Notes: generated from the sequence alone by a model not told the origin. Shown: positions 346 to 53,832, counted from the first letter of the stretch. The stretch is 64,000 nucleotides of DNA from Thecamonas trahens ATCC 50062 (GCF_000142905.1 NW_013657662.1:62001-126000), one strand, 5' to 3'. Numbers and translations: made by a program.

Positions 346-3300
346 TTACCCCAGCGTCAGCCGCAGATCGTTGTACCGCTTCTGCAGCTTCAGGTACCGC
401 TCCTCCATCTTCTTGCAGTCGATGACCGCCTCGTCGCGCTCAAACTTGTACTCGGCAAGCTTCATCTTGGCGTCCACGAGCGCTGCTTCGGCAGATTGCG
501 TCCTTGCAGACTCGGCAGCCAGCGACGACTGCGCCTCGCTCACGTCGCCACGCAGTCGGTCGAGCTCGGAGCACATGTCGGCCTTCTCGCGCGTCAGCTC
601 CGAAAGCACCGTCTCGAGCAGCGACCGCGCGTTCTCCAGCTCGGCCTTGGCTCCGGCCGCAGCCTTGTGCTCTTCTCGGAGCACCTCCAGCTTGGTCGTC
701 AGGTCGTCAAGCTCCATCCGCACTTCATCCAGCTCCTCGCTTGCCTTGACCTTGGCCGTGCTCGCCCGCTCTACATCGGCCTGAGTAGCGTCCAGCCGCG
801 TCTGTAGCGTCTCCAGCGATGCCGCAAGCGCAGACTTTTCGCCTTGCAGCAAGCCCATCGCCGTTGCAAGCTCCACCTTTTCGTCACGCTGGGCCTCGAG
901 CTGCATCTCCAGCCGGTCCACCGCGGCTTGCTTCGACGTCACTGACGAGCTCAGCGTCTCGTCCTGCGCAGAGAGTCGCGCCACCCGCATCTGCAGCTCG
1001 CTCAGCTCGCTCTGCGCCGCAGCTACCTGCGCCTTGCTCGCCTCCAGGTTGCGGACCTCTTCCTGCAGCGCGCGGACTTGTCCTGACAGCGACGCCGCCT
1101 CCTCCTCCAGCGCCGCAACCTTGGCCGTCGCTCTCTCGGCCGCGCCTTCAGCCTCCTCGCGCTGCCCCACGAGCTTGGCCAGATCGGCTTCGTTCTGCCG
1201 CTGCCGCTCCTCCGCCACCGCGCTCGCAGCCTGCAGCGTCGAGATCTGGCTCTCTGCCGCCGCCCGAGCCGATTCAACCGACGCCAGTGCCGACGAGCTG
1301 GCCGACTTTTGCTGCTCCAGCTGCGCCAGCTCGTCCTTGAGCCCCACGAGAGCCTCACGCGCTGCCGCCACCTCGGCCTGTGCCGCCACGGCCTCGGTGG
1401 TGGCAGCCTCGGCTGCCGCCCGCGCCGCTGCCTCGGCCGCCTCGGCTGCTTCGGCTACGCCGGCAGCCTGTGCCGCCGCCGCCTCGGCCTCTGCCAGCCT
1501 CGCTGCCGCCGCCTCCGACTCGGACACTGCCGCCACCCGCGCCGCCTTGGCCTCCGACGCCTCACTACGCGCACTCGCCGCCACCGCTGTTGCTGCCTCG
1601 GCTTCGGCCTGCGCCTCGTCGCGCGCCATTTCCGCTTGCGCGACCTCCTCGAGCAAGTCTTGTGACCGAGCCGTCAGGCTCTCCACCTTGGGCTCGAGCT
1701 TCTCAAGCGCCACCTGCGCCCGCTCGCTAGCCTCGGTCTTGGCCGCTACCTCGCACTCCAGCCGTCCTGCCTCGGCCTCCAACCGCGTCGCCTCCGTCTG
1801 GCCGGCCTCGATCTTGGCCTTGAGGTCGATAAGCGCCGCGAGGCCGATCGACCGCTGCGACTCGTGACGCGCTAACACGGCCTCGAGCTCAGCAACCTGG
1901 CTCGACAGCTCGGTGCTCTTCTGACGCACGCTAGCGAGCTCTGCTGTCTTGGCATCGAGCTCCGACGACGACGCTGCCAGCTTCAACTTGAGCTCCGCCA
2001 TCTGGCCAGTCATCTCGTCCTTGCGCTGCGAGAGGAGCGAGACCTCGGCGTTAAGCGTCGCCTTGTCGCCCGCGAGCGACGCCAGCAGCGCATGGAGATC
2101 AGCCTTGTCGTCGTCGAGCGCAGCAAGCTCGTCTTGCTTGGCCGCAACCGCCGCCGCCAGGCTCTCCTCGCGCTCAGCGAGAATCTCCAAGTTGGCCAGC
2201 GTCTTGGCCTCAGTCTCGGCGAGCGAACGGTGTGATTCGAGAATCGAGTCGTTGACCACAGAGAGCTCTAGCTTTTGCTTCTGGATGGTCGAGAGGCCCT
2301 CGGCAACCTGTGCCATGACCTCGCGGTGCGAGCGCTTGCTCGATGTGTTCCGTGGTGAGTTGGGGTTCGACGCTGTCGACAAAGGAGCCTCGGCGTCGGC
2401 CGTCGCGTCTAGGTCGACCGCTTCGGAGCCGACCGTCGAGTCGTCGTCGGTCGGCAGCGCATCGGCGACAGACGCTTGGCTGTTGTGCGCCCGCTCGAGC
2501 GCCGCGTTGGACGCACCCGACGAGCCAACTTCCGACGCCAGCGTCTCCAGCGCTGCCGTCACCTCGGCGTAGTTGGCCTGCAGCAGCTTGACCCGCTTCT
2601 TGAGCGCAGAGTTTTGCTTGACCAGCTTGTCCGAGTGCGCTTTCATCTGCAGCTTGGCCTTTTTCCACTTTTTCTTGACCTCGTTGACCCGCTCCGAGTC
2701 GTCGTTGAGCGCCTCGCGAGCAGCCTCCAGCTCGGCGAGGAGCGCGTTGTTAGCCAGCGAGAGCGAGGCGTTCTCCTCTTCAAACTCCTGCACCTGCCGC
2801 TCCAGCTCCTCCAGCGCCGCCGCCTGCTCTGCTGCCGCCTGCGCTGTGATCGACGACGCCCGCGGCCGACCGGCCGGTGCAGGCTCGGCCGGCCCGGGAG
2901 CAGGAGCCCCCACTACTCCGCTTTCGCTTGCCCCTGCCGGCGGCATCACTGCCGCATCCATCGACGCTGCCATCGACGCCACAAACTCGGCGCCGCCGCG
3001 GGCCTCCAGTTCGGACTCGAGCGCCGCAATGTACCCGCGGAGCTTGGCAATCGTCTTCTCGAGCTTGGAGATGTGGAGCTCCATCTCGGCCGGCGACCGC
3101 TTGGCGTTGACCGTGGCAACGTTTTTGATTTCCTTGGCTCGCTTGCCGAACCGCAGCGTCGACAGCGTCTCGGTTGCGTTGAACGACGATGGCGAACAGT
3201 TGATGATGAGCAGCGTGAGCGAGTTGCCGCCGAGCGACTCGGAGAGCACCCGGGTCAGCTTGGAGTCGCGGTACGGGATGTGCCGCGACTTGCCGTCGGT

Positions 3301-4140
3301 CAGCGCGTAGATGACCTTGCCCAGCGCCGTCAGAGACGTGTTGATGTTCTTGGCCTCGTCGAGCCGGTCGCCGGTTGCGTTCGTCTTCTTCACCTTTTCG
3401 GAACCGGCCAGATCAACCAGGTTGAGCTTGGCCGTCGTCTCGGACAAGTCCTTGAGGTTCTTGCCGCGGACCGTCATCTGGAACAGCGAGTGCGACCGCG
3501 AGGAGACCGCGTTCATGTCGGTCGATGAGACCTTGCGGTTCTCGCCGCCGGCGTCCATCACTGCCAGCACCTCGTCGGCGGTGTTGACCCGTCGCTCAGT
3601 GAGGCCCTGCACAAACACGCCACGGGCCTTGTTCTCGCGAATAGCTAGCTTGCCCTGTGTGGGATTGAGCAAGTCGCGCACCCGCTCGAGGTAAATCTCA
3701 AAGTAGGCCACCGAGACCTCGTACTCGTAGTTGACAGCGTTGCTGTCGATGCGGGAAAAGATCTCCCGCACAATCCGCGGAATAATGCCCATCATGGCCT
3801 CGTCCTTAGTATCAGGCCCCATCATGGTGTGGGTCTTGCCTGAGCTCGTCTGTCCGTAGGCAAAGATGGTGCCGTTGTAGCCAGCGAGCACATCGTCTAC
3901 AAGCTTGGAGGCACAGCCTTCAAAGACGGTCTTCTGGTCAGCCTGTGGCCCAAACACAGCATCAAACACAAACTCATGGTCGTCATGCACCACCCTCTTC
4001 CCGTTGTCATCCAGCACCATGACCTCCCGTCCGCCCTCGGCCACCTCGCGCGAGTTCTGAGGACGGAACCGGCACACCACCTTGACGCCCTTGCCTCCCT
4101 CCGGCCCGTCCGGTCCACTTGCGCCACTCCCGGAAGCCAT
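346..4140 (-). CDS. Kinesin-1 (conventional kinesin heavy chain)-like motor with a long coiled-coil tail, 1264 aa
   Basis: N-terminal motor domain: VVCRFRPQN, GYNGTIFAYGQTSSGKTHTM, SSRSH, LVDLAGSEKV, HIPYRDSKLTR, LGGNS and CSPSSFN, all typical of kinesin-1. About 900 aa of heptad-rich coiled coil follow. Confidence 0.9.
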   Translation of the reverse strand: MASGSGASGPDGPEGGKGVKVVCRFRPQNSREVAEGGREVMVLDDNGKRVVHDDHEFVFDAVFGPQADQKTVFEGCASKLVDDVLAGYNGTIFAYGQTSSGKTHTMMGPDTKDEAMMGIIPRIVREIFSRIDSNAVNYEYEVSVAYFEIYLERVRDLLNPTQGKLAIRENKARGVFVQGLTERRVNTADEVLAVMDAGGENRKVSSTDMNAVSSRSHSLFQMTVRGKNLKDLSETTAKLNLVDLAGSEKVKKTNATGDRLDEAKNINTSLTALGKVIYALTDGKSRHIPYRDSKLTRVLSESLGGNSLTLLIINCSPSSFNATETLSTLRFGKRAKEIKNVATVNAKRSPAEMELHISKLEKTIAKLRGYIAALESELEARGGAEFVASMAASMDAAVMPPAGASESGVVGAPAPGPAEPAPAGRPRASSITAQAAAEQAAALEELERQVQEFEEENASLSLANNALLAELEAAREALNDDSERVNEVKKKWKKAKLQMKAHSDKLVKQNSALKKRVKLLQANYAEVTAALETLASEVGSSGASNAALERAHNSQASVADALPTDDDSTVGSEAVDLDATADAEAPLSTASNPNSPRNTSSKRSHREVMAQVAEGLSTIQKQKLELSVVNDSILESHRSLAETEAKTLANLEILAEREESLAAAVAAKQDELAALDDDKADLHALLASLAGDKATLNAEVSLLSQRKDEMTGQMAELKLKLAASSSELDAKTAELASVRQKSTELSSQVAELEAVLARHESQRSIGLAALIDLKAKIEAGQTEATRLEAEAGRLECEVAAKTEASERAQVALEKLEPKVESLTARSQDLLEEVAQAEMARDEAQAEAEAATAVAASARSEASEAKAARVAAVSESEAAAARLAEAEAAAAQAAGVAEAAEAAEAAARAAAEAATTEAVAAQAEVAAAREALVGLKDELAQLEQQKSASSSALASVESARAAAESQISTLQAASAVAEERQRQNEADLAKLVGQREEAEGAAERATAKVAALEEEAASLSGQVRALQEEVRNLEASKAQVAAAQSELSELQMRVARLSAQDETLSSSVTSKQAAVDRLEMQLEAQRDEKVELATAMGLLQGEKSALAASLETLQTRLDATQADVERASTAKVKASEELDEVRMELDDLTTKLEVLREEHKAAAGAKAELENARSLLETVLSELTREKADMCSELDRLRGDVSEAQSSLAAESARTQSAEAALVDAKMKLAEYKFERDEAVIDCKKMEERYLKLQKRYNDLRLTLG

Positions 4141-4163
4141 GCTTATCCCTTCAAACTACCAAG

Positions 4164-4198
<35 letters not shown>

Positions 4199-4199
4199 G
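4164..4199. repeat. Compound (CT)n(CA)n microsatellite upstream of the kinesin start
   Basis: ctctctc...cacacac seen directly. Confidence 0.9.
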
Positions 4200-5079
4200 C
4201 GCCTTTGCTCGGTGCCTCGGCCAGGCGTCACGTGTGGCCTGCCGTCGTCTTGCGAACCCCGCTCGCTTCTGGTCCGAGGGCTGGAGAACGGGGAGGAGGG
4301 TACGCCGAGCCCTCGCTCGCCCTGTCGCCTTCCACGACTCAACGGTCTTTGAAACAAACGAACGCATGAGCGTTGAATCAATTTGCTCCACCGTGGTTTC
4401 TATGACAGTATGGACAACCAACCACCCAATGAATGCCACTGCAGCCAGAGTTGAGTAATTGACGTTTTGCCTTGTTCTCCCGCTCTACCACCATCGATGC
4501 CTTGGAAACCAGTCTAGTATCTAGATACGTGCTCACGCTTGATGTCACACTCTTGCCCGCTTGCCATCTTGCCTCTAACCCTCCTCAGCGCAGTGTCATG
4601 CCGAGCTTCCGCTGTGTCTTCTCAAAAATACGGCAGGCTGCCGTGCCTCTCATCAAGCCACTACCTCTGGCGCTCTCATCACTCCCCGCCACCATCCCAC
4701 CACGGCAGTGCAATCCTACACCAGCTAACCACTCTCCGTACTCTGCATGCTCTCCGGTCACGTCATAGTCTCTATATCTTGCAAACGCATGTTCGGTATC
4801 CTCTAGTGCGACCGCTACCGGAAAAAAACTTGTCGAACGCGCGCGAGGACAGAGCAGCACCCACCTCGCGTAGCACCCACGCAGAGACAAGGCCATCTCG
4901 ACGGGTAGAACCTGACCACACCGCTCTTCAGCCACTATCAGTATCTGCGCCAGGCAGAGAGTAGGCTTATTTTCCTGTAGACTAGCTGCTGAGGTTCAGG
5001 TCTCCGGCTTTGTCCCCGGCTCGCTCAGCTTTGCCTGTCGCTCCCGGCAGCAGCGCTCACGAGAGGGACTGTGCTGACC

Positions 5080-8000
5080 ATGGCGCGTCGCAAAAGAAAG
5101 GGCAACAAGCCGCCACCGCCTCCGGCGCACCTGGCGTGGGCAGACAGCCTTGATAGACCAGACCAAGTAAGCCAGGAGCATGTCGACACGGCGTACGGGC
5201 TCGCCGTCGAGCCGGTCTGCCCCGACGCGAGCGGGAAGAACAGGGCACACTCAGCGTACTGCCTCCACGGGTGGGCCAAGCGCGGCAAGGGTGTGTGGGC
5301 GACCCGGCCGAGTATTCTGAGCGGTTTCAAGGACAATCCCGAGGAGTTGCTGCGGATCCCGCCGCCTCCGCCGCCTCACGAGCGGTTCGAATGGGTCGGC
5401 AACACGAGCAGGCGGCCTTACAAGATCGGCAAATGCATGGTCGGTCTCGCCAACCTCGGCGCCACTTGCTACATGAACTCGCTCCTGCAGACGCTGTACA
5501 TGGATGTGCCGTTCCGGGCTGCAGTCTATGCCTTTGATCCTGCGTGCGTGGCTCAGACCATCCCGCCCGGACAGACCTCGGTCGTTCACGAGCTGCAGCG
5601 GGTCTTTGCCTACCTCGAGCTCTCTCAAAAGACGGTCTACGTTCCGCAGCAACTGGTTTCTGCTCTTGGCTTGGACACCACCGAGCAGCAGGATGCACAA
5701 GAGTTCTACAAACTCTTTCTCAGCGCCATCGAGACCGAGATGCGCCAGTCGGACGACCCGCATGTGGCGAGCGCGGTGGGTCGCACCTTCCGTGGCAAGC
5801 TCTCATACGTCACCACCTGTCAGTCTTGCAAGCACGCGAGTCGACGCAGTGAGCCGTTCTACGAGCTCGATCTCAACTTTCGGTCGGCATCGGACAAGCT
5901 GGCCACGCTGGAGAACCTCATCACCGACTACGTCACGCCTGAGGTCATGGATGGTGACAACAAGGTCTTCTGCTCAAAGTGTGAAGGCAAGCATGCTGCC
6001 ACCAGAGCCATCGAGCTCGAGGAGCTTCCGTCATCACTGGTCGTCCAGGTCAAGCGCTTCACCTATGACATGGTCACCTTCCAGAAGAAGAAGATCCACA
6101 CCAACATTTCGTACCCGCAGTCGCTCAACCCTGGCCGCCTCGTCCCAAACGCCGACTTCCCCGCTCACGAATACCGGGTGTGGGCCATCCTCGAGCACGC
6201 TGGTGCCACTACTTCGGCTGGCCACTACATTGCCTTTCTTCGCGAGCCAATCAACCAGTACTGGTACCGTTTCAACGACGAGGAGGTCCGCTGCGACATG
6301 AACTTTGACGATCCGCTTGACGCAGGTGCCGATGCGCTTGTCGCCGGCACCGACACCGCCACCGAGACAAAATCCAAGTCCAAGTCCAAGTCCAAGTCCA
6401 AGCCCAAGCCCAAGCCCAAATCAGCCGCCAAGTCCAAACCAGCTGCCAAACTCAAGTCGGCCGCCAAGTCCAAGGCTGCTGCTACCGCCAAGGCCAAGCC
6501 CAAGGCCAAGCCCAAGGCCAAGGCCAAGGCGCCCGCCACTGAGGCGGGTAAGAAGCGTGGACGGACCACCTCGAGATCTCGCCGTCGGACCAAGACGGCC
6601 AAGGCTCTTGACGGTTCGCGCCGCGCGTCGTCCTCTGGCGTGTGCGACATGATCGAGGAGCAGCAAGAGGAGGAGGAGATCGGCTCCGATGCGGTCGAGT
6701 CCACGTCGAGCTCGCGGCCGAGCCGCATCCGCCGCTCGCGCCGTACAGCGGCCGCCAAAGCCAGGTCCGGCACTGCCGACAGCAAGCACCAGATGATGTC
6801 TGTCACAGACATCAACAAGGAAATTGTCGAGAGTCAGAAGGCTGTCGGCCGGTCAGCAATTGTCAACCAAGCCCCCACGCTCGAGGAGAACACTTTGTCG
6901 CGCAGGTCCTCTCGCCGCAAGCGGAAGCGCAGCCCATCACCCAAGTCACCTGGCCCTGTGCCTGATGTCAAGCCGAAGTCCAAGAGAGTGGCCAATACCA
7001 AGACCAAGCCCACCGCCAAGGCGGGCAAGGCCAAGGCGACCAAGGCCAAGGCGACCAAGGCCAAGGCGGCCAAGGCCAAGGCGGCCAAGGCCAAGGCGAC
7101 CAAGGCCAAGGCGACCAAGGCCAAGGCGACCAAGGTTAAGCGGGAGCCAAAGATTGTCAAGCCGGCCGTGCCGCCAGCAGCGAGCGTGGACCCGCTCGTT
7201 GACGCCCACGGCTCATCGCTAGAGCGATGGGAGTCGAAGAACGCGTACATGTTTGTGTACTCGAGGCACCGCGACGAACCGCTGCCAGAGTACACAGTTC
7301 CGCAGGCGCTGCGCGAAGAGGTCGAGGCCGAAAACACCAAGCTGCTGGCCAGGATCTATGAGTTCAAGTCCAAAGTGCAGGCTGCGCAGGAGCAGGTCGA
7401 CACCGAACGTGCGCGATACACCAGCCTTATGGAGCGCAACCGCGAAGCGCTCAAGACCGATCCCCGCAACGTTCGCTGGCTGCCAGTCGCCTGGCTCCGT
7501 TCGTGGGCACTCGGCAACCGCCCGCCGCTCGTCGCAGAGCCAGAGCTGCTGTGCAAGCACGGCTGCATCGACCCGCAGGAGGCGCCCAACCTCAAGGTTG
7601 TCCACGCCTCGGTCTACCACGAAATGGTCGAGCTGTACGCCGACAGCGCTTCTCCACAATTTCCGGAGCTCAACCTCACGTCATGCTGCATCGAGTGCCT
7701 TCGCAGCTACGTCAGCCATCGAAAGTCGCTGCGCGACGACATCGCCCATCGCGCCGCAGTTCTCACGCGCATCGACAACGGCGAGCTCAACGGCGACGAC
7801 GACGCGGGTGTCTACATCGACAAGAAGTTCCTTACCCGCTTCAGACGGTCGACCACGTCGACCACCTATGGATCCGGCGACATCAACGAGAAGATCATGT
7901 GCGAGCATGGCAAGCTGACCCCTTCAGGTGCTGTTGCCGTCAAGGTCGGCTCGGACGACTTTGACTTTATGTGCCAGTATGCCGGCGTGACTGGCACCAA

Positions 8001-46552: not shown

Positions 46553-49500
46553 TTACTCAAAGCCGGCGGCAAGGCCAATGACCTCACGGAGGCCGTCGTG
46601 GACAAGGTGCCTGGTGACGCTAAGCGAGTACGGGACGATCGAGTACGATGGCTTGGCTGAGAGGAGCTGGTAGTACGGGTGCGCCGAGCGCGCCGCGTTA
46701 AAGACCACCTTCTTGGCCGCAGTCCGCTTGGTGTACGAGGGATAGACCTTGGCAGTCACCGCGAGCGTGAACCGGACCGGGTCGAGGATGCCCTCAAAGA
46801 TGACGTCGACGGCGATCGAGAACACATACCGCTCCGAGTCGCCGCACGGGCCGCGCGGGAAGAGCCGCCGCTCCGACTGGACCGAGAGCGAGGCAACGAC
46901 GGCTGCGACGCCGTCCTTGCCACCGCTCCGCGGCTCAAACGTGTCGACCGGCAGCTCAAAGTGATCCTCGGGGTCAAAGTTGGCGAGCGGCGAGACATAG
47001 ACTCCGGCGCACGCGGCAACCTTGAGCGGGCCACCGAGCGACGTTGAGGCGCCTGCTGCCGCCGCCGGCGGTGCCGCCGCCACCTCGAACCGAATCTTGC
47101 GGGCATGCCCGATGATGAGGCAGTACTGCAGGCCGTGCCGCTTGCGCTTGACAGCCACAGGCACGTACTGCGTGCCCTCAGCCTCGAGGACAGTAAACCG
47201 GGTCGCAAGTGGCACCGTTTCCACCGTCCGCGGGTCGTCCGAGAGCACGCCGTGGAAAACGGTAAACGGCTCGGGCCGCACGCCATGCCGCTCGACAGAG
47301 TACGCCACACTCGGCCGCGTGTGGACAAAGCCGGTGATAGCTGGCTCCTTGGCCCGCGCCTCGAGCTTGCGCCGCTGATGGGCAGCGAGCTCTTGCTCAG
47401 TTCCGTGCGCCACGTGGGCAGACTGAATCATCGACTCGCGCGGCGCGGCTCGACGCCGCATCTTGCGGATGACATGCTCGCCCTTGGCCCGCGCGTACTC
47501 GGCTTCGCTCATCGACGCGTGCTTGGCTGAGTTGTACGCTGCGCGCTCTGCGCGCGTCAGCCGAGACTTGCGCTTGCCCTCTAGCGCGAGTGGGAGCCAT
47601 GGCTTGTCCACCCGCCGCAGCACCTTTTCCTCCGCCACCCGCTCGGCGCGCCGTGCCCGATGGGCAGCCTTGCGCCGCTCGTACTCATCGCGCCCATAGA
47701 ACTCCATCTTGGCCCGCGCGTACTCCTTCTTATCCTCGCGGGTAAACTGCGACCGCGGCTTGTTGCGCAGGTGCAGCGGGACCCACCCGGCGTGCTCCTT
47801 GGTCGACGCAGTGGTCGTTCCAAGCGATAGCAGTGTGCTGTCGCCGCCCTCGGCCACTGACAGCCGCAGCAGCTCGAGCTCCTGCCAGTCCTCCATCCGC
47901 TGTGCCCGCTTCAGCTGCCGGTTTCGCCGGTAAGCTTCGTAGCCGGCAGGCCCCATCGCCTCGCGCTTGGCGCGGAAGTACCGCTGAAAGTCGGCTCGCG
48001 TAAAGTCGACCTTGGGCTTGCCCACCAAGTCGCGCGGAACCCACGCCTCGTCCTCGCCCTCGTCGTCCGACGACACTTCCTCCAACCTAGCCGCCAGCTC
48101 GGCAATTCGCGCCTCGGCCAGCTCGACCTCGGTCGGCGCCAGATGCGAGCTGTTGACGCCGGCGGCCGCTGACCGCGCACTTCCACGCCCACCGGCGGGC
48201 GCCAAGCCCGACGCGGCCTCCGACCCGCTCGAGTCCGAGCCGGAGCCGATATCTGGGCCGGGGCTCGAGCTGGAGCTTGCGCTTGCACTTGCGCTCGAGT
48301 TAGAGTCCACACCCGAGTTGTGGCTATCAGACGCGCTGTCCGACGACTCGCGGTTCGAGTTGCGCGACCGCTCCACGTTGCGCAGGAACGCCCGCTTGGC
48401 CTTGACGTATGCCTTCTTGTCATCCTCGGTAAAGGCGGACTTGGCCTTGTTTCGCAGGTTGTCTGGAATCCATGACCGGTCGGCCTTGGTAGCCTCGCGC
48501 TGCTCTTCCTTGGTGAGCGAGATCCGGTCGCGCCGCGACGAGCTCTCACCATCGTCCTTGGTGCTCCGCTGCGACCGGTGCCGCTCCCGCTGACGACGGT
48601 ACTCGTTGTCGCCAAGGAACTCGCGTTTGGCACGGTTGTATGCCTTTTTGTCAGCGCGAGTAAACTCGGACCGTGGCTTGCCCTGCAGATGCTCGGGCAC
48701 CCACGACTTGTCGCGGCCTGCCTTGGCCTTGGTCGGCGATGCCTCGGTCGGCTCCACCGAAGAGACTTCTGCCGCCGGCAACTGCAGCTTGGCAGCCTCC
48801 AGCTCAGCCCGCTTTGCTCTCAACAGCTCCTGGTACGCCTCCTCGCCGAGGAACTCGCGCTTGGCCTTGGCGTACCGCTTCTTGTCATCGCGGGTAAACT
48901 GAGCTTTGGGCTTGGTCTGCAGATCGGCAGGCACCCACGACCGGTCGCGCTGCGCCTTGTCGAGCACTTCGGCGCGCGTCGGTGACCTGGGCGCCTCGGC
49001 TTCAGGCTTGAGTTCGGGCTTGGGCTGAGGTTTGGCTTCCGCTCCAGGCTCTGCCTCTGCCTTTGCTTCGGCCATTGCCATTGCCTCGGCCTTTGCCTTT
49101 GCCTCGGCCTTTCCTTGGCTTCGGCATTTCCTTGGCTTCGGTCTTGGCCTTGGCTTCGGCCTCGGCCTCGAGCTCCTTCAACCGGGCCTCGAGCTCGGCA
49201 CGATCCCTCTCGTCGTCGAGAGCTAGCTGCTGCTCGCGCCACTCACGCTGCGCAGCCAGGTACTCGGCCCGCTCGGCGGCTGTAAACTCACGCCGCTTCT
49301 TGTCGCGCAGGTGGAGAGGGACCCACTCCGGCACCTCATTCCGGGTGATGTCCAGCGCCGCGAGCACAGCCGAATTGGTCACAACCTCGGAGCTAGCCTC
49401 GGAGCCCGAGTCCGAGTCCGAGTCTGCACCCAACGCCGGCGGCGGCGCCTGGGTCAACTCCTCCTCGGAGGTGGGGGAAGCTGCGGTCGCCAAAGGCGCT

Positions 49501-52500
49501 TCAGTACCACTCTCGCCCTCCTTTCGCGACTCCTTTCGTGACGCCTTGAGCGACTCGTACGCATCCGAGCCCAGGAACTCGCGCTTGGCGCGCATATACG
49601 CCTTCTTGTCATCGCGCGTGTACTCCGACTTGGGCTTCTCGCGCAGGTGCTGGGGCACCCACGAGCGATCCGTCCTGTCGACCACCGGGCCGACTTCGCC
49701 GAGCGAGTCCGACTTGGACTTTTTGTTGGCTCGGAGCTGCTGGTAGGCCTCGCGACCCAGAAAGTCGCGCTTCGCCCTGTTATACCGCTTCTTGTCGTCG
49801 CGAGTGAACTCGGCCTTGCGCTTCTCGCGCAGATCCGCAGGTACCCACGACCGGTCTTCTTTGGCTTTGCGGGTCAGCGTCGCCGGCTCGGGCCGCTTGG
49901 CGACTTCCGGTGTAGCCGCCAGGTCGGCCTCGGCGCTCGCACCGCTCTCGTTCACCGCGTCCTCTTCCTTGCGCGACCGCCGCTCGCGTAGCCGGCGCTC
50001 GTACTCGTCCTTGCCCAGAAAGTCGCGCTTGGCCTTGGCGTACCGCTTCTTGTCGGCACGGGTAAACTCGGACTTGGGCTTGTACCGCAGATCGGCAGGC
50101 ACCCACGGGCGATCGTCGTCATCAGCAGCATCGGTCGCCGGTCCACTAGGCTCGGCCGTGGTTCCAGCTTCGCTCTCGTCCGCCGCCTCCTCCTTGCGCG
50201 ACCGCCGCTCGCGCAGCCGGCGCTCGTACTCGTCCTTGCCCAGAAAGTCGCGCTTGGCCTTGGCGTACCGCTTCTTGTCGGCTCGAGTAAACTCGGACTT
50301 GGGCTTGCCTTGCAGATCGACAGGCACCCACGAGCGGTCGTCGTCATCAGCAGCATCGGTCGCCGGTCCACTAGGCTCGGCCGTGGTTCCAGCTTCGCTC
50401 TCGTCCGCCGCCTCCTCCTTGCGCGACCGCCGCTCGCGCAGCCGGCGCTCGTACTCGTCCTTGCCCAGAAAGTCGCGCTTGGCCTTGGCGTACCGCTTCT
50501 TGTCGGCACGGGTAAACTCGGACTTGGGCTTGCCTTGCAGATCGACAGGCACCCACGAGCGGTCGTCGTCATCAGCAGCATCGGTCGCCGGTCCACTAGG
50601 CTCGGCCGTGGTTCCAGCTTCGCTCTCGTCCGCCGCCTCCTCCTTGCGCGACCGCCGCTCGCGCAGCCGGCGCTCGTACTCGTCCTTGCCCAGAAAGTCG
50701 CGCTTAGCCTTGGCGTACCGCTTCTTGTCGGCACGGGTAAACTCGGACTTGGGCTTGCCTTGCAGATCGGCAGGCACCCACGAGCGGTCGTGGTCGTCAC
50801 CATCGTCCTTGCCCTTCTCGTTCTCGACACTCTTTGGTGCTGCTGCTGGCGGCGTCTTGTTCTCCATGCCAGTGGCAGCGAGGCCGAGGTCCGACTCGAG
50901 CGACGACTGGCGCGATGACTGGCGCGACGACTGGCGAGAGTTGGAGCGCAGTTCCATAATCTTGGCAAATGCCTCGTCGCCGAGATGCTTGCGCTTCGCC
51001 TCGTTGTACGCCTTTCTCTCCTCACGGGAGAGCGAAGTGCGCGGCCGGTTGCGAAGGCCGTCAGGAACCCACGGGTCGCTCGAGGTATTTGCACCAAACC
51101 GCGGCGAGTGCGACGGCGAGAGCGGTGCCGAGTCAGGCAGGGCCAGTTTGCCGTCGTCGGTCGAGCGGGGCGCGCCGGGGCGGCGCTTGCGCTCCTTGAG
51201 CGCGAGGTATGCCTCGGTGCCCATGTATGCGCGCTTGGCCTTGTTGTACCGCTTCTTGTCCTCGCGAGTGTACTCAGCCTTGGGCTTGAGCCGCAGATTC
51301 TCCGGGAGCCACGACTTGTCGTCAGCGTGCTCGGAGGCAGTCACCGGCGGTGTCGGCTCGCTAGCGGACGGCATTGCCGCAGACGGCTCTTCAGCCTTGC
51401 CGCGTGCCTTGGCCTTGGCTGCCTGGTATGCCTCGGCACCAAGAAACGCGCGCTTGGCCTTGTTGTACCGCTTCTTGTCCTCGCGGGTGTACTCGGCCTT
51501 GGGCTTCTCGCGCAGGTCGGCAGGCACCCACGACCGGTCCTTCCCGCCGTCGGCCGGGAACGAAGACTTCTCTTTGCCCGGCGACGGCGCGTGCACGATG
51601 ACCGGACCGGACATAGAGGTGGGCAGCTCCGGCAGCGGGCGCTTAGGCGAGCTCGGCGGGCGCGCAGGGTCGGCGGCGGCGACGGCGGTGGCCGCGCTGC
51701 CGGACTCGTTCGACGTCTTGGCCGCCTGGCGCATCTCGTTGTACACCTCTTGACCAAAGTAGTCGCGCTTGGCCCTGTTGTATCGCTTCTTGTCCTCGCG
51801 AGTAAACTCTGACTTGGGCTTGGTCCGCAGGTCGGCAGGCACCCACGAGCGGTCGGCTTTGGGGTCGGCTTTGGGGTCGGATGACGCGGGTAGGTCCGGC
51901 TTGGTCGGCGACGGCGGCAGGACGCGCGGCGACATTGAGAGCACACCGCCCGATTCACCGGTAGCCTTGACCGCCCGCAGGCGCTTGTACTCGGCCTCGC
52001 CGAGGAACGCGCGCTTGGCCTTGTTGTACCGCTTTTTGTCATCGCGGGTAAATTGGGACTTGGGCTTGTCGCGCAAGTCGAGCGGAATCCACGACCGATC
52101 CTTGGTGGCGTCGGGCACAATGAGAGCAGCAGGCGCAGACATGGCCGAGTTGGCGCCGGGATCCGAGTCTTCGGCGGCGGCGGCCTCGGCGGCTGCCGCC
52201 CGCAGCGCCTTGCGGCGCTTGTGCTCGGCATGCACCAGCGCCCGCTCCTCGGGCGTCATCGCATGAAGCTTGGCCTTCTTGTACCGGTGCTTTTCTTTCG
52301 GCGTCATTTCCGACACCGGCTTGCCGCGCAAGTCCTCGGGAATCCACGATCGGTCGCGCGACGTCGACATCTCTTCCAGAATTGACGACCGCTCGTGCGG
52401 CGCATGACTTCCGGACGACTCGGCCGGCGCGCGCGGCGCGACGTGGCGCGCGAACCGCGACCGCGCTGCTGCGCGCGCCTCGGACTCGAGTCGCGGGTGC

Positions 52501-53832
52501 AACCCGGGTTCGGCGCCGGCATCGGCCTGCACGCCACCATCGTCGAGCGCCTCGGCACGGACAGCCTCCAATGCCTCGGCTCGCGCTTTGCTGCGAGCGC
52601 GAGACTGATCTGCCCGCCGCTCTGCGTGACGTTGGGCCTTGCTGGACGATGCACGCTGCGCCTCTACCTGCTCGTCGTATGAGCGGGCAAAGTCAATGGC
52701 CTCGGGCCGGACGCCGGTCGACCGAGCTGCCGCCTGTCGGCACTGCGCACGCTCCATCGAGCTCAGCAGCGGCTTGGGCTTGGGCAGCTTGACCACGCCG
52801 GACTGTGACATGATCTCCTCGCGGACGAGAACAAACGCCTCGGCCCGCGCCCGACGCCGCAGCCGCGACTGCTCCATCCGCCGCGCAGCATGGCGCGCCA
52901 GCTTGCGCTGCATTTCGGAGCCAGACGCCACCGGAGGCACGCACTCGGCACCAGCATGCCGCAGCGCACGCCGCTCCGCATCGTTGTCGTTGTCCTTGCG
53001 CTCGGTGCTTTTGGCAATCCGGATCGGCCGCGAAGCCGGCTTGAGCGGGCTTGGCGCCGGCTCGCCGTCAAAGCCGGCCGAGTTCGACCGTGGCGTCGGG
53101 CCCTGCGGCGTGGGCATCTCGATCTCGATTGAGAGCTGCACGTCCATTTCGCTGTTGCTGCTCGCGGCAGCGTCGTCGTCATCAGAGAGCTCAGGTGACG
53201 AAGAAGCCGACGAAGAGTTGGCCTCGGGAACTGGCGAAGACGTCGGGCCTCCGGCCTCCAACGGCGGCGAGTGCGCCTCGTCTGCCGCGGCAGCCTTGCC
53301 CTCGCCGTCTTCTTCCGACGGCAGGACCTGCTCAGGCTCGACAAGTCCAGCAGCAACCGCCGCCCACTGCGCCATCATCATGTCTGTCTGCAGCACCATC
53401 GCCTCGTTCTCGTCCGACATCTCGCCGGCGGCGTCCCCACTCACCGCTTCGGACTCGCGGCGGGAGAGCACCTTGGTCGGCGTCGGCACTCGATCAAGGC
53501 TGTCCCCGTACAAGCCGAGTAGAGCCCCAACCAGAACCGCAGCACCCCATACCACACCCGCAGCACCCCATACCACACCCACCACAGTGCGTACCGCACC
53601 CGCCACACAACCTGTGAGTTTCACCTCTAGCTCTGGCTACCTCGTCGTGAAGGCACCGCCCAAAAAATGGCCTTCTTCCGCTGGCAAGCCGCCACCACCA
53701 CCTCCCGCCGACCGGGCGAGGAGGCACAACGTACTTGCCAGACGCCAGCATGGCCTCCCACTTGGCGGCCTGCTTCATAGACGCCTCCTCGGCCAAAAGC
53801 CGAGCAGCGTCATCCCCACCAGGCTCTGACAT
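46553..53832 (-). CDS. Large (~2,350 aa) protein with 19 copies of an unrecognised ~40-aa repeat and a C-terminal DUF3694-like (RABGAP1/kinesin-3-associated) domain; intron 53500-53734; frameshift(s) near 49110-49129
   Basis: Two long ORFs share the repeat DRSWVPxDLxxKPKSEFTRxDKKRYxKAKRxFLGxxxY. The GTACGT...GACAG intron joins MSEPGG...LASG to NLDRVPTP in frame. The C-terminal AVDVIFEGILDPVRFTLAVTAKVYP resembles RABGAP1 DUF3694. Confidence 0.75.
49966..50790. repeat. Near-identical 225-bp (75-aa) coding tandem repeat, ~3.6 copies
   Basis: Segments recur with a 225-bp offset; for example, the ORF copies at 50146 and 50371 differ at only two residues. Confidence 0.92.

What the first reader, a model, noticed from the sequence alone, without database searches (positions are those of the whole stretch)
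46553..53832. Giant protein built from 19 copies of an unrecognised W-P/HMG-like helical repeat, capped by a RABGAP1/kinesin-3 DUF3694 domain
Seen: 19 copies of a ~40-aa module (consensus DRSWVPxxLxxKPKSEFTRxDKKRYxKAKRxFLGxxxY) separated by variable low-complexity linkers. The W, P, L and Y positions are conserved even in diverged copies, which implies an independently folding bead-on-a-string domain. I do not recognise it as a named family; its second half loosely resembles the last helix of an HMG box (xxEKxxYxxxA). Established: the C-terminal domain resembles DUF3694 of RABGAP1 and KIF1/KIF13, but here it has no TBC or motor domain. Inference: a multivalent scaffold whose basic repeats bind a polyanion (microtubule tails, nucleic acid or membrane) and couple it to kinesin/Rab traffic. 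This is the best candidate for an undescribed system in the window.
Basis: partly seen in the sequence, partly recalled or inferred. Interest (0 to 1): 0.8.

Follow-up and report, generated by a model that had tools for sequence, protein, structure and literature searches.

The report
Giant protein with undescribed 19-fold repeat
A gene of the gliding protist Thecamonas trahens encodes a protein of about 2,300 residues made of 19 copies of a small, basic, helical module seen almost nowhere else in public sequence data; its function is still a guess.

Summary
The minus strand of 46553-53624 carries 19 copies of a ~45-aa unit (invariant W, P, L, Y, A). A profile built only from copies outside this gene finds all 19 (i-E 1e-12 to 1e-21).

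- **Organism:** Thecamonas trahens ATCC 50062, an apusomonad.
- **Gene model:** the coding region is two overlapping ORFs, not one. They are offset by one base inside an 18-nt-period low-complexity tract (~49109-49130). GC3 periodicity switches frame there, so this is one gene with an assembly indel or a real frameshift.
- **Fold of the unit:** AlphaFold2 gives an extended W-x-P arm plus two helices (pLDDT 78). No solved structure matches it. The HMG-box resemblance is noise.
- **Distribution:** a profile scan of 1.84 billion representative proteins gave 9 hits. About six are true environmental relatives. Four other Thecamonas genes carry 1-3 units.
- **DUF3012:** Pfam DUF3012 passes its cut-off only by summing weak repeats. 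The similarity covers 21 columns (hhalign 52%, or 23% with copies from outside this gene) and lacks the family's cysteines.
- **C-terminus:** the DUF3694 call is plausible but below threshold.
- **Function:** unknown. I favour a multivalent electrostatic tether linked to the cytoskeleton.

Another first-reader note on this window had already flagged the 225-bp duplication.

The parts
49002..53624 (-). Upstream ORF (frame A, 1540 codons, stop at 49002-49004). It holds an N-terminal ~420 aa without any recognised domain, then units 1-13. The first in-frame ATG is at 53420.
46553..49177 (-). Downstream ORF (frame B, open from 49177, first ATG at 49081, stop at 46553-46555). It holds units 14-19 and the C-terminal domain.
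49109..49130 (-). Zone of the one-base frame change, A to B. It lies inside an 18-nt-period GCC-GAG-GCA-AAG (E/A/K) low-complexity tract at 49053-49162. One repeat unit there is 16 nt long instead of 18.
   Evidence: GC3 periodicity switches frame between the 49424 and 49124 windows.
52236..52355 (-). unit 1 (40-aa core, divergent second half)
51981..52100 (-). unit 2
51735..51854 (-). unit 3
51420..51539 (-). unit 4
51201..51320 (-). unit 5
50961..51080 (-). unit 6
50670..50789 (-). unit 7 (first copy of the 225-bp tandem array)
50445..50564 (-). unit 8 (tandem array)
50220..50339 (-). unit 9 (tandem array; 2 nt different from unit 8 over 224 nt)
49995..50114 (-). unit 10 (last copy of the tandem array; its linker differs)
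49737..49856 (-). unit 11
49551..49670 (-). unit 12
49215..49334 (-). unit 13 (degenerate, net charge 0, runs into a coiled-coil-like E/A/K tract)
48827..48946 (-). unit 14
48593..48712 (-). unit 15
48362..48481 (-). unit 16
47933..48052 (-). unit 17
47675..47794 (-). unit 18
47489..47608 (-). unit 19
46556..47290 (-). C-terminal ~245-aa domain, probably beta-rich. It is homologous (26-28% identity) to the C-terminus of a Thecamonas ankyrin-repeat protein. The weak Pfam DUF3694 match falls at 46739-46840.
49961..50799 (-). 225-bp tandem array, 3.7 copies, 97% matches: a recent amplification of one unit plus its linker

Best explanation
This is one protein-coding gene of Thecamonas trahens of about 2,290 codons. 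In this assembly it is interrupted by a one-base frame change inside a low-complexity spacer. The protein has an N-terminal ~420 aa without a recognisable domain. It then has 19 copies of a ~45-aa module separated by 22-103-aa disordered A/S/E/R/P-rich linkers. It ends in a ~245-aa domain remotely like DUF3694, the cargo-binding tail region of kinesin-3 motors. Each module is a small, basic, autonomously folding domain (net +2 to +6 in 17 of 19). It has an extended W-x-P-x-x-L arm and a K-P-K turn. A first helix is opened by a hydrophobic staple and capping box (F-T-x-x-D) and closed by a glycine. A second helix follows. The module family is undescribed and almost confined to apusomonad-like organisms. 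Inferred, not shown: the protein works as a multivalent electrostatic tether. Many weak contacts of the basic modules with an acidic polymer would add up to high avidity. I favour the microtubule surface or tubulin tails as that polymer. The C-terminal domain would dock a partner or cargo, as DUF3694 regions do in KIF13B.
For: Anatomy. One gene: the ORFs overlap, there is no intergenic space, the same repeat family lies on both sides, and GC3 periodicity switches frame at ~49124. Organism: (100% identity to a named Thecamonas protein, and the contig length equals that of G000:C27). Folded module: AF2 with a 26-row alignment gives pLDDT 77.6, pTM 0.51 and helices at 22-36 and 38-59. Constraint: an independent profile recovers all 19 units, and core dN/dS is 0.40. 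Charge pattern and aromatic-free linkers. Restricted family: 9 hits in 1.84e9 representatives, and none in JGI metagenome or IMG/VR contigs. Cytoskeletal company: the other Thecamonas carriers are two long coiled-coil proteins (my reading of the translations; Pfam finds no domain in them), a CAP-Gly plus RING protein whose CAP-Gly domain is completed by an upstream exon, and one protein with no recognised domain. C-terminus: a weak DUF3694 match occurs in this protein and in two homologues on the same part of the profile, and language-model features score 0.92 with 13 of 30 hits in DUF3694 clusters. DUF3694 regions of KIF13B take part in NPHP4 binding and Rab6-vesicle binding (PMC5290278, PMC7710357).
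Against: There is no direct evidence for any ligand. The microtubule preference rests on the domain company kept by paralogues and on charge alone. One environmental carrier is an RPB2-like RNA polymerase subunit, which points towards the nucleus or nucleic acids instead. The DUF3694 assignment is below Pfam's threshold. The single-sequence fold failed (pLDDT 32), and no PDB sequence relative exists. The frame change could be real, in which case the gene is broken or makes two products. No annotated protein with either ORF's exact sequence is on record.
Confidence: 0.4

Rival explanations
1. The module is an RNA- or translation-linked interaction unit. Its N-terminal arm, W-[VIL]-P-x-[DH]-L-[RQ]-G-K, is a Trp variant of the YxPPx(phi)R motif (ELM LIG_eIF4E_2). 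That motif occurs in DDX3X, eIF2A and eIF3g. The protein would then be a multivalent binder or sponge for eIF4E, eIF4A or another initiation factor, or a scaffold of RNP granules.
For: The spacing of the aromatic residue, P(+2), L(+5) and R(+6) is the same. Thecamonas eIF2A carries AYVPPHLRGKSGK, which compares with units such as SWVPEHLQGKPRS and GWVPLHLRNKPRS. The profile also picked up an environmental protein with five KWVPPHLRG repeats. The motif is known in translation factors (PMC3510515) and in Ded1 N-termini that interact with eIF4A (PMC11917139). One carrier is an RNA polymerase subunit.
Against: The defining Tyr is Trp in every unit. None of the 19 units has the second Pro, and R/K at +6 is present in only 12 of 19. 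The motif is followed by 30 conserved residues that the translation factors lack. Even in eIF2A, mutating the motif did not abolish eIF4E association (PMC3510515). The complex prediction with Thecamonas eIF4E never ran, so the idea is untested.
Confidence: 0.15
2. The module descends from the bacterial DUF3012 lipoprotein motif. It would have been acquired by horizontal transfer into an apusomonad ancestor, lost its cysteines and then multiplied. On this reading the finding is a divergent member of an existing Pfam family.
For: Pfam DUF3012 scores 35.1 bits on ORF A, above its cut-off of 25. The pattern [LM]-x-x-K-P-K-[GS]-[DE]-[FW]-T-x-x-[DE]-x-x-x-[FY]-A-K is shared in register with 96 real DUF3012 proteins. 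hhalign gives 51.7%, P 1.5e-4, against a shuffle mean score of 7.8, sd 2.2, with the observed score at 20.5. The unit profile in turn finds a bacterial BON/OsmY protein with four DUF3012-like repeats.
Against: No single unit is significant. Only 21 of ~45 columns align. The W is out of register by one residue. Both conserved Cys and the lipoprotein signal are absent. The probability drops to 22.5% when only family members outside this gene are used, and many of those have K-A-K or K-S-K instead of K-P-K. One of 150 column shuffles reached the observed score.
Confidence: 0.15
3. The units are not folded domains. They are an array of linear motifs in a disordered, highly basic protein, for example bipartite-NLS-like or hub-binding motifs. 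The helices would form only on binding.
For: In other carriers the units sit inside long disordered regions. The K-x-K...K-K-R spacing resembles a bipartite NLS (my reading of the sequence). A 60-residue model with pTM 0.51 and no structural neighbour above Z 4.8 is not strong proof of a stable fold.
Against: The conserved positions are mostly hydrophobic or helix-capping residues (W, P, L, F, T, Y, A, G, Y) spread over 35 residues. That is the signature of a core, not of a short linear motif. pLDDT is 85-90 over residues 11-30.
Confidence: 0.15
4. The frame change is real. The locus would then be a recently broken gene, or two products: a 13-unit protein, and a 6-unit protein with the C-terminal domain.
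For: The assembly shows the shift. There is no GT in 49002-49180 that could start a conventional intron. The only candidate 5' site is at 49182, and using it would remove coding-like repeat sequence. An ATG at 49081 opens ORF B.
Against: Both halves keep the repeat under constraint, and coding GC3 periodicity continues. The ORFs overlap with no promoter space. The shift lies in a short-period repeat with A-runs, a typical place for an assembly error.
Confidence: 0.12

Closest known systems
Pfam PF11216 (DUF3012), ~55-aa lipoproteins of Gamma- and Alphaproteobacteria
   Same: They share a central pattern in register over 21 columns: hydrophobic-x-x-K-P-K-[GS]-[DE]-aromatic-T-x-x-[DE]-x-x-x-[FY]-A-K. 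Both are probably a turn followed by an N-capped helix.
   Different: DUF3012 is a single-copy, secreted, lipid-anchored peptide with two invariant Cys (W-C ... H-C). The unit here is cytoplasmic, Cys-free, about 15 residues longer and repeated 19 times. It has a W-x-P arm and a second helix. The statistics are marginal.
Pfam PF12473 (DUF3694) of kinesin-3 tails (KIF1B, KIF13A/B) and RABGAP1
   Same: The last third of the profile (positions 93-149) matches weakly but repeatedly in this protein and two homologues. Language-model features place the domain with DUF3694 clusters. Its position, as a terminal docking domain after a long flexible region, is similar.
   Different: The score is below the gathering threshold (16.6 against 27 bits). 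The first two thirds of the profile are unmatched. There is no motor, FHA, PH, PTB or TBC domain. Thecamonas shows no canonical DUF3694 anywhere.
YxPPx(phi)R motif (ELM LIG_eIF4E_2) of DDX3X/Ded1, eIF2A and eIF3g
   Same: The unit's arm has aromatic-[VI]-P-x-x-L-R-[GN]-K with identical spacing (PMC3510515).
   Different: It has Trp instead of Tyr and a single Pro. It is embedded in a conserved 45-aa module rather than standing as an isolated linear motif.
Tandem basic microtubule-binding repeats of structural MAPs (tau/MAP2/MAP4 type) and other beads-on-a-string scaffolds
   Same: The architecture is the same: many short basic units separated by flexible linkers, which gives avidity for an acidic polymer (comparison from general knowledge).
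   Different: There is no sequence similarity. MAP repeats are disordered until bound, whereas this unit is predicted to fold on its own. Binding has not been tested.

Membership tests
DUF3012 (PF11216) | A significant match of an individual domain to the HMM | tested here: not met
   Whole ORF A scores 35.1 bits (cut-off 25), but no stretch passes on its own. Scanned singly, 7 of 19 units match, with a best E of 0.015.
DUF3012 (PF11216) | Coverage of the 32-position model, including the two conserved cysteines (W-C ... H-C) and a lipoprotein signal peptide | tested here: not met
   Matches cover profile positions 9-28 only. No unit has Cys at either position. Real members fetched here all have both Cys and a lipobox.
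DUF3012 (PF11216) | Profile-profile homology | tested here: inconclusive
   hhalign gives 51.7%, P 1.5e-4, over 21 columns. It gives 22.5% with family members from outside this gene. One of 150 column shuffles reaches the score.
DUF3694 (PF12473) | HMM score above the gathering threshold (27 bits) | tested here: not met
   16.6 bits, E 0.009, profile positions 113-146 of 149.
DUF3694 (PF12473) | Consistent remote signal in homologues and by an independent method | tested here: met
   P0010 (Thecamonas ankyrin protein) gives E 0.015 at positions 93-148. P0011 (an environmental orthologue of P0010) gives E 0.0043 at positions 106-149. Atlas features score 0.92, share 197 of 256 features, and place 13 of 30 hits in DUF3694 clusters.
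DUF3694 (PF12473) | The fold shared by family members | tested here: inconclusive
   Single-sequence AF2 reached pLDDT 32; strands predominate but the model is unusable. No PDB sequence relative was found. No canonical DUF3694 sequences could be fetched for hhalign.
HMG box (PF00505) | HMM match or an L-shaped three-helix fold | tested here: not met
   No HMG hit at E<=1 for any of the 19 units. The model has two helices. LEF1 and SSRP1 HMG boxes score Z 3.2 and 3.1, at ranks 16 and 28, within the noise.
ELM LIG_eIF4E_2 (Y.PP.[ILMV]R) | Tyr at position 1, Pro-Pro at 3-4, hydrophobic at 6, Arg at 7 | tested here: not met
   Position 1 is Trp in 19 of 19 units. The second Pro is present in 0 of 19. 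Leu at 6 is present in 19 of 19. Arg at 7 is present in 12 of 19.
ELM LIG_eIF4E_2 (Y.PP.[ILMV]R) | Binding to eIF4E | not tested
   Complex prediction with Thecamonas eIF4E (L031:1435-2109:-) was never run: one call failed on a mistyped residue range, and the machine was busy at each of 11 further tries.

The most novel reading that the evidence does not exclude
The unit is a new class of folded mini-domain. It would build the translation-factor YxPPxLR-type arm into a stable helical scaffold. The 19-unit protein would then be a multivalent organiser or sponge of an initiation factor or RNP assembly in apusomonads. This may derive from a bacterial DUF3012 peptide captured by horizontal transfer and re-used inside the cell.
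Probability: 0.08. Interest if true: 0.75.

Novelty: new variant of a known kind. Interest (0 to 1): 0.5.

Why it matters
Apusomonads are the sister group of animals plus fungi, and their cell biology is almost unexplored. A 19-fold array of a protein module that appears in only a handful of sequences among 1.84 billion representatives is a clean example of lineage-specific domain invention. The array is still expanding, as the 97%-identical 225-bp copies show. It gives a small, tractable 45-residue fold to characterise. The module co-occurs with CAP-Gly, RING, coiled-coil and DUF3694-like parts. If it binds microtubules or a translation factor, it would define a new interaction module. It also shows a way Pfam repeat scoring can mislead: DUF3012 passes its threshold here only by summation of weak repeats.

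Tried and rejected
1. **HMG-box likeness:** rejected.
2. **Foldseek against the PDB with the unit model:** nothing at E<=0.001. VIA-align wide gave a best Z of 4.8 (TatB), which is generic helix-helix similarity.
3. **Word-based homologue search with the C-terminal region of ORF B:** no hit. With the repeat region of ORF A: only P0002.
4. **JGI metagenome contigs with the C-terminal alignment and with the unit alignment:** no relatives. IMG/VR with the unit and with the RPB2-like carrier: none.
5. **Genome-contig scan with alignment A2:** I replaced it with a DNA pattern for K-P-K-G-D-W-T, which fetched real DUF3012 genes.
6. **A third 'DUF3694-like' place in the genome (G000:C31, L024):** rejected. 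It is probably an antisense-frame artefact, because it overlaps a 951-aa ORF on the other strand and has an R/H/L/D-rich composition.
7. **Single-sequence AF2 of the C-terminus:** failed at pLDDT 32. A profile of three homologues against PDB sequences found nothing.
8. **Exact look-up of four candidate products of the two ORFs:** none is on record, so the public gene model could not be compared.
9. **Intron explanation of the frame change:** the only GT is at 49182. The implied 64-nt intron would be purine-rich repeat coding sequence. I consider this unlikely, but it is not excluded.
it is in a different frame, and the GT...AG pair I tried (53734 to 53612) does not restore frame A. The N-terminus is left open.
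11. **Complex prediction (unit with Thecamonas eIF4E):** not run (one mistyped range; machine busy at 11 further tries). **Atlas look-up of a single unit:** not run.
12. **Joined protein:** Each piece was searched by reference on its own.
Full report
**What is there.** The minus strand between 46553 and 53624 holds two long ORFs, 49002-53624 (1540 codons) and 46553-49081 (842 codons from its first ATG). A motif scan finds 13 copies in the first ORF and 6 in the second. The 19 copies align without gaps. Their consensus is xxxDRSWVPxDLRxKPKSEFTRxDKKRYxKAKRxFLGxxEY. W7, P9, L12, Y28 and A31 are invariant, and K15, T21 and K32 are nearly so.

The signal does not depend on this gene's own sequences. 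A profile built only from the 7 units of paralogous genes and 16 environmental units recovers all 19 at i-E 1e-12 to 1e-21. Pairwise comparison of the 40-codon cores gives mean pN 0.32 against pS 0.52, with a median dN/dS of 0.40. So the copies have diverged under constraint. Seventeen of the 19 cores have a net charge of +2 to +6 (pI 9.2-10.4). The 773 linker residues are A/S/E/R/P-rich and hold only 4 aromatic residues. Four copies form a 225-bp tandem array with 97% matches, and copies 8 and 9 differ at 2 of 224 nt.

**Gene model.** The region is not a single ORF. The upstream frame stops at 49002-49004. The downstream frame is open from 49177 and lies one base further on. The change falls inside an 18-nt-period tract coding E/A/K repeats (49053-49162), where one repeat unit is 16 nt instead of 18 (my reading). 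Third-position GC is high in frame A down to ~49124 and in frame B from there on. The ORFs overlap by 80 nt with no intergenic space, and both carry the same repeat family.

I therefore read this as one gene with either an assembly indel in a short-period repeat or a recent real frameshift. A conventional intron is unlikely. The only GT upstream of the frame-A stop is at 49182, and splicing from it would remove coding-like repeat sequence. No protein with the exact sequence of either ORF is on record, so I could not compare the public annotation.

**Organism and surroundings.** The neighbours are eukaryotic: protein kinase, MINDY, calpain, two kinesins, E2F/DP and VPS9+MORN. A paralogue search returned a protein 100% identical to 'ankyrin domain-containing protein [Thecamonas trahens ATCC 50062]' on a contig whose length equals that of G000:C27. 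So the window is from this apusomonad (28.7 Mb, ~65% GC). Notes by other first readers on talin and RSU1 in this genome had pointed the same way.

**The unit as a structure.** AlphaFold2 was run on a 60-residue unit with a 26-row alignment of units from this gene, from paralogues and from two short environmental proteins. It gave mean pLDDT 77.6 and pTM 0.51, with pLDDT 85-90 over residues 11-30. The model has an extended N-terminal arm, a helix at 22-36 and a second helix at 38-59.

The conserved residues fit that model; this is inference from the sequence. F20-T21-x-x-D24 is a hydrophobic staple plus capping box at the start of helix 1. G37 ends helix 1. W7, P9, L12, F20, Y28, A31, F/L35-36 and Y41 can form a small core. 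Foldseek found no PDB match. The exhaustive VIA-align search gave a best Z of 4.8 (TatB), which is generic two-helix similarity. HMG boxes appear only at Z 3.1-3.2, and no unit hits the HMG profile.

**Distribution.** In the Thecamonas genome the unit profile finds, besides the 19 copies here, units in four other genes:
- a 1177-aa coiled-coil protein with three C-terminal units (C32);
- a protein with two units, a RING-type C-terminus and a CAP-Gly domain whose first half lies in an upstream exon (C21);
- a 1035-aa coiled-coil protein with one unit (C55);
- a 663-aa protein with one unit by the profile and a second, W-K-P-type copy seen in its translation (C27).

The coiled-coil label for C32 and C55 is my reading of their translations; Pfam finds no domain in either.

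A profile scan of every one of 1.84 billion representative proteins returned 9 hits. Six look like true relatives:
- P0001 (5 units);
- P0002 (6 units, an orthologue of the C27 protein from another GC-rich organism);
- P0003 (2 units);
- P0004 (an RPB2-like RNA polymerase subunit with one unit in its C-terminal tail);
- P0008 and P0009.

All six come from metagenome or run assemblies without names. JGI metagenome contigs and IMG/VR gave nothing. The family is real, occurs in more than one species and is extremely narrow.

**Relation to DUF3012.** Pfam DUF3012 scores 35.1 bits on the long ORF, above its cut-off of 25, but with no individually significant stretch. Scanned one by one, 7 of 19 units match, with a best E of 0.015, on profile positions 9-28 of 32. 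I fetched real DUF3012 genes with a DNA pattern for K-P-K-G-D-W-T. They are ~55-aa proteobacterial lipoproteins of the form ...G-S-x-x-W-C-x-x-M-K-E-K-P-K-G-D-W-T-A-N-E-A-x-D-F-A-K-H-C.

The central pattern [LM]-x-x-K-P-K-[GS]-[DE]-[FW]-T-x-x-[DE]-x-x-x-[FY]-A-K is shared in register. hhalign gives probability 51.7%, P 1.5e-4, over 21 columns. Column shuffles average a score of 7.8 (sd 2.2) against 20.5 observed, and one of 150 reaches it. With family members from outside this gene the probability falls to 22.5%. Both cysteines, the signal peptide, the W register and half of the unit do not correspond. So this is a motif-level resemblance, and may be a remote relationship. It is not membership.

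[quoted passage not shown] The only Y-V-P-P-H-L-R in the Thecamonas genome is in eIF2A, as AYVPPHLRGKSGK. The profile also found an environmental protein with five KWVPPHLRG repeats. The defining Tyr and the second Pro are absent from all 19 units, so membership fails. The resemblance is kept as a rival hypothesis. I located Thecamonas eIF4E, but the complex prediction never ran: one call failed on a mistyped residue range and the machine was busy at all 11 further tries.

**C-terminal domain.** The last ~245 residues match Pfam DUF3694 weakly (E 0.009, 16.6 bits against a cut-off of 27, positions 113-146 of 149). Their closest relative in the genome is the C-terminus of the ankyrin-repeat protein on C27 (E 8e-5, 26-29% identity by tool). 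That protein and an environmental orthologue (P0011, 50% identical) give the same weak match to the same end of the profile. The language-model look-up places the domain with DUF3694 clusters (score 0.92, 197 shared features, 13 of 30 hits).

Single-sequence AF2 failed (pLDDT 32), and there is no PDB sequence relative. A third candidate in the genome is probably an antisense artefact. I put the DUF3694 relationship at roughly 70%, which is short of 'established'. In KIF13B the DUF3694 region contributes to NPHP4 binding and lies in the fragment sufficient for Rab6-vesicle binding (PMC5290278, PMC7710357).

**How it most likely works.**
- *Shown:* the protein is a long flexible chain carrying 19 small basic folded modules and one terminal domain of a type found in cargo-binding tails.
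- *Inferred:* the modules act together as a multivalent binder of an acidic partner, and the terminal domain docks something else.

I favour a cytoskeletal partner, the microtubule surface or tubulin tails. The reason is that other carriers of the module are long coiled-coil proteins and a CAP-Gly/RING protein, and the terminal domain type belongs to kinesin-3 tails. The support is circumstantial, about 0.25-0.3 for that ligand. The RPB2 fusion and the YxPPxLR-like arm keep a nucleic-acid or translation-linked reading alive.

**Novelty.** The module is an undescribed, lineage-restricted family. The architecture, tandem basic modules on a disordered string, is a known kind. Hence I class it as a 'new variant of a known kind'.

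Noticed in passing
L011:5349-6014 (G000:C32) and L012:4025-4120 (G000:C21): A second short motif, [RK][RK]K-x-Y-R-[IV]-x-H-R-[DN]-G-x-V-E-[IV]-V-x-x-K-P, probably a beta-hairpin. It occurs four times in the C32 coiled-coil protein and once in the CAP-Gly/RING protein. A whole-genome profile search finds it nowhere else. It therefore occurs only in two of the five proteins that carry the W-P unit.
   Followed up: partly
L022:3586-8970 (ENA ERZ4220937, 48% GC): P0004 is a 1794-aa RPB2-like RNA polymerase subunit. It is only 32-39% identical to the three Thecamonas RPB2 paralogues. It carries one W-P unit in a long basic C-terminal tail. Its source organism is unknown (a divergent eukaryote or a giant virus), and there is no IMG/VR relative.
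   Followed up: partly
L020:3138-8207 (G000:C27:349137-354206); P0010, P0011: An ankyrin-repeat protein of 1428-1689 aa has a weak Raf-like RBD hit and a C-terminal domain homologous to the one in this finding. This is a second architecture for the DUF3694-like domain in Thecamonas, and it is conserved in an environmental relative.
   Followed up: partly
L012:2737-3267 and 3110-5455 (G000:C21): The CAP-Gly domain of the unit-bearing RING protein is split by an intron. The first half (MSWLEVGKRVRVNGASGTVRFLGYTQF...) lies in an upstream exon, and the second half (GKHNGTVRGVAYF...) starts the long ORF.
   Followed up: no
P0006 (JGI metagenome, 406 aa): A bacterial BON/OsmY-like protein has four tandem DUF3012-like repeats (W-A-L-K-P-K-S-E-W-S-K-E-D-F-K-A-F-A-V-A-K-R). 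This shows the bacterial motif can also be repeated and Cys-free.
   Followed up: no
window 52400-53300, minus strand: The N-terminal region of the protein holds two copies of an R-H-A-x-R-R-x-[ED]-Q-S-R-x-R-x-[KR]-A-R-A-E-A helix-like segment and no Pfam domain.
   Followed up: no
window 53525-53580, minus strand: A 21-nt tandem repeat (2.7 copies) codes V-V-W-G-A-A-G in the open frame upstream of the first ATG. It is unclear whether this is coding sequence or 5' UTR.
   Followed up: no
L029:987-2912:- (G000:C8): The Thecamonas eIF2A orthologue carries the only Y-V-P-P-H-L-R in the genome, followed by G-K-S-G-K-S. The eIF2A motif described in PMC3510515 is thus conserved in apusomonads.
   Followed up: partly
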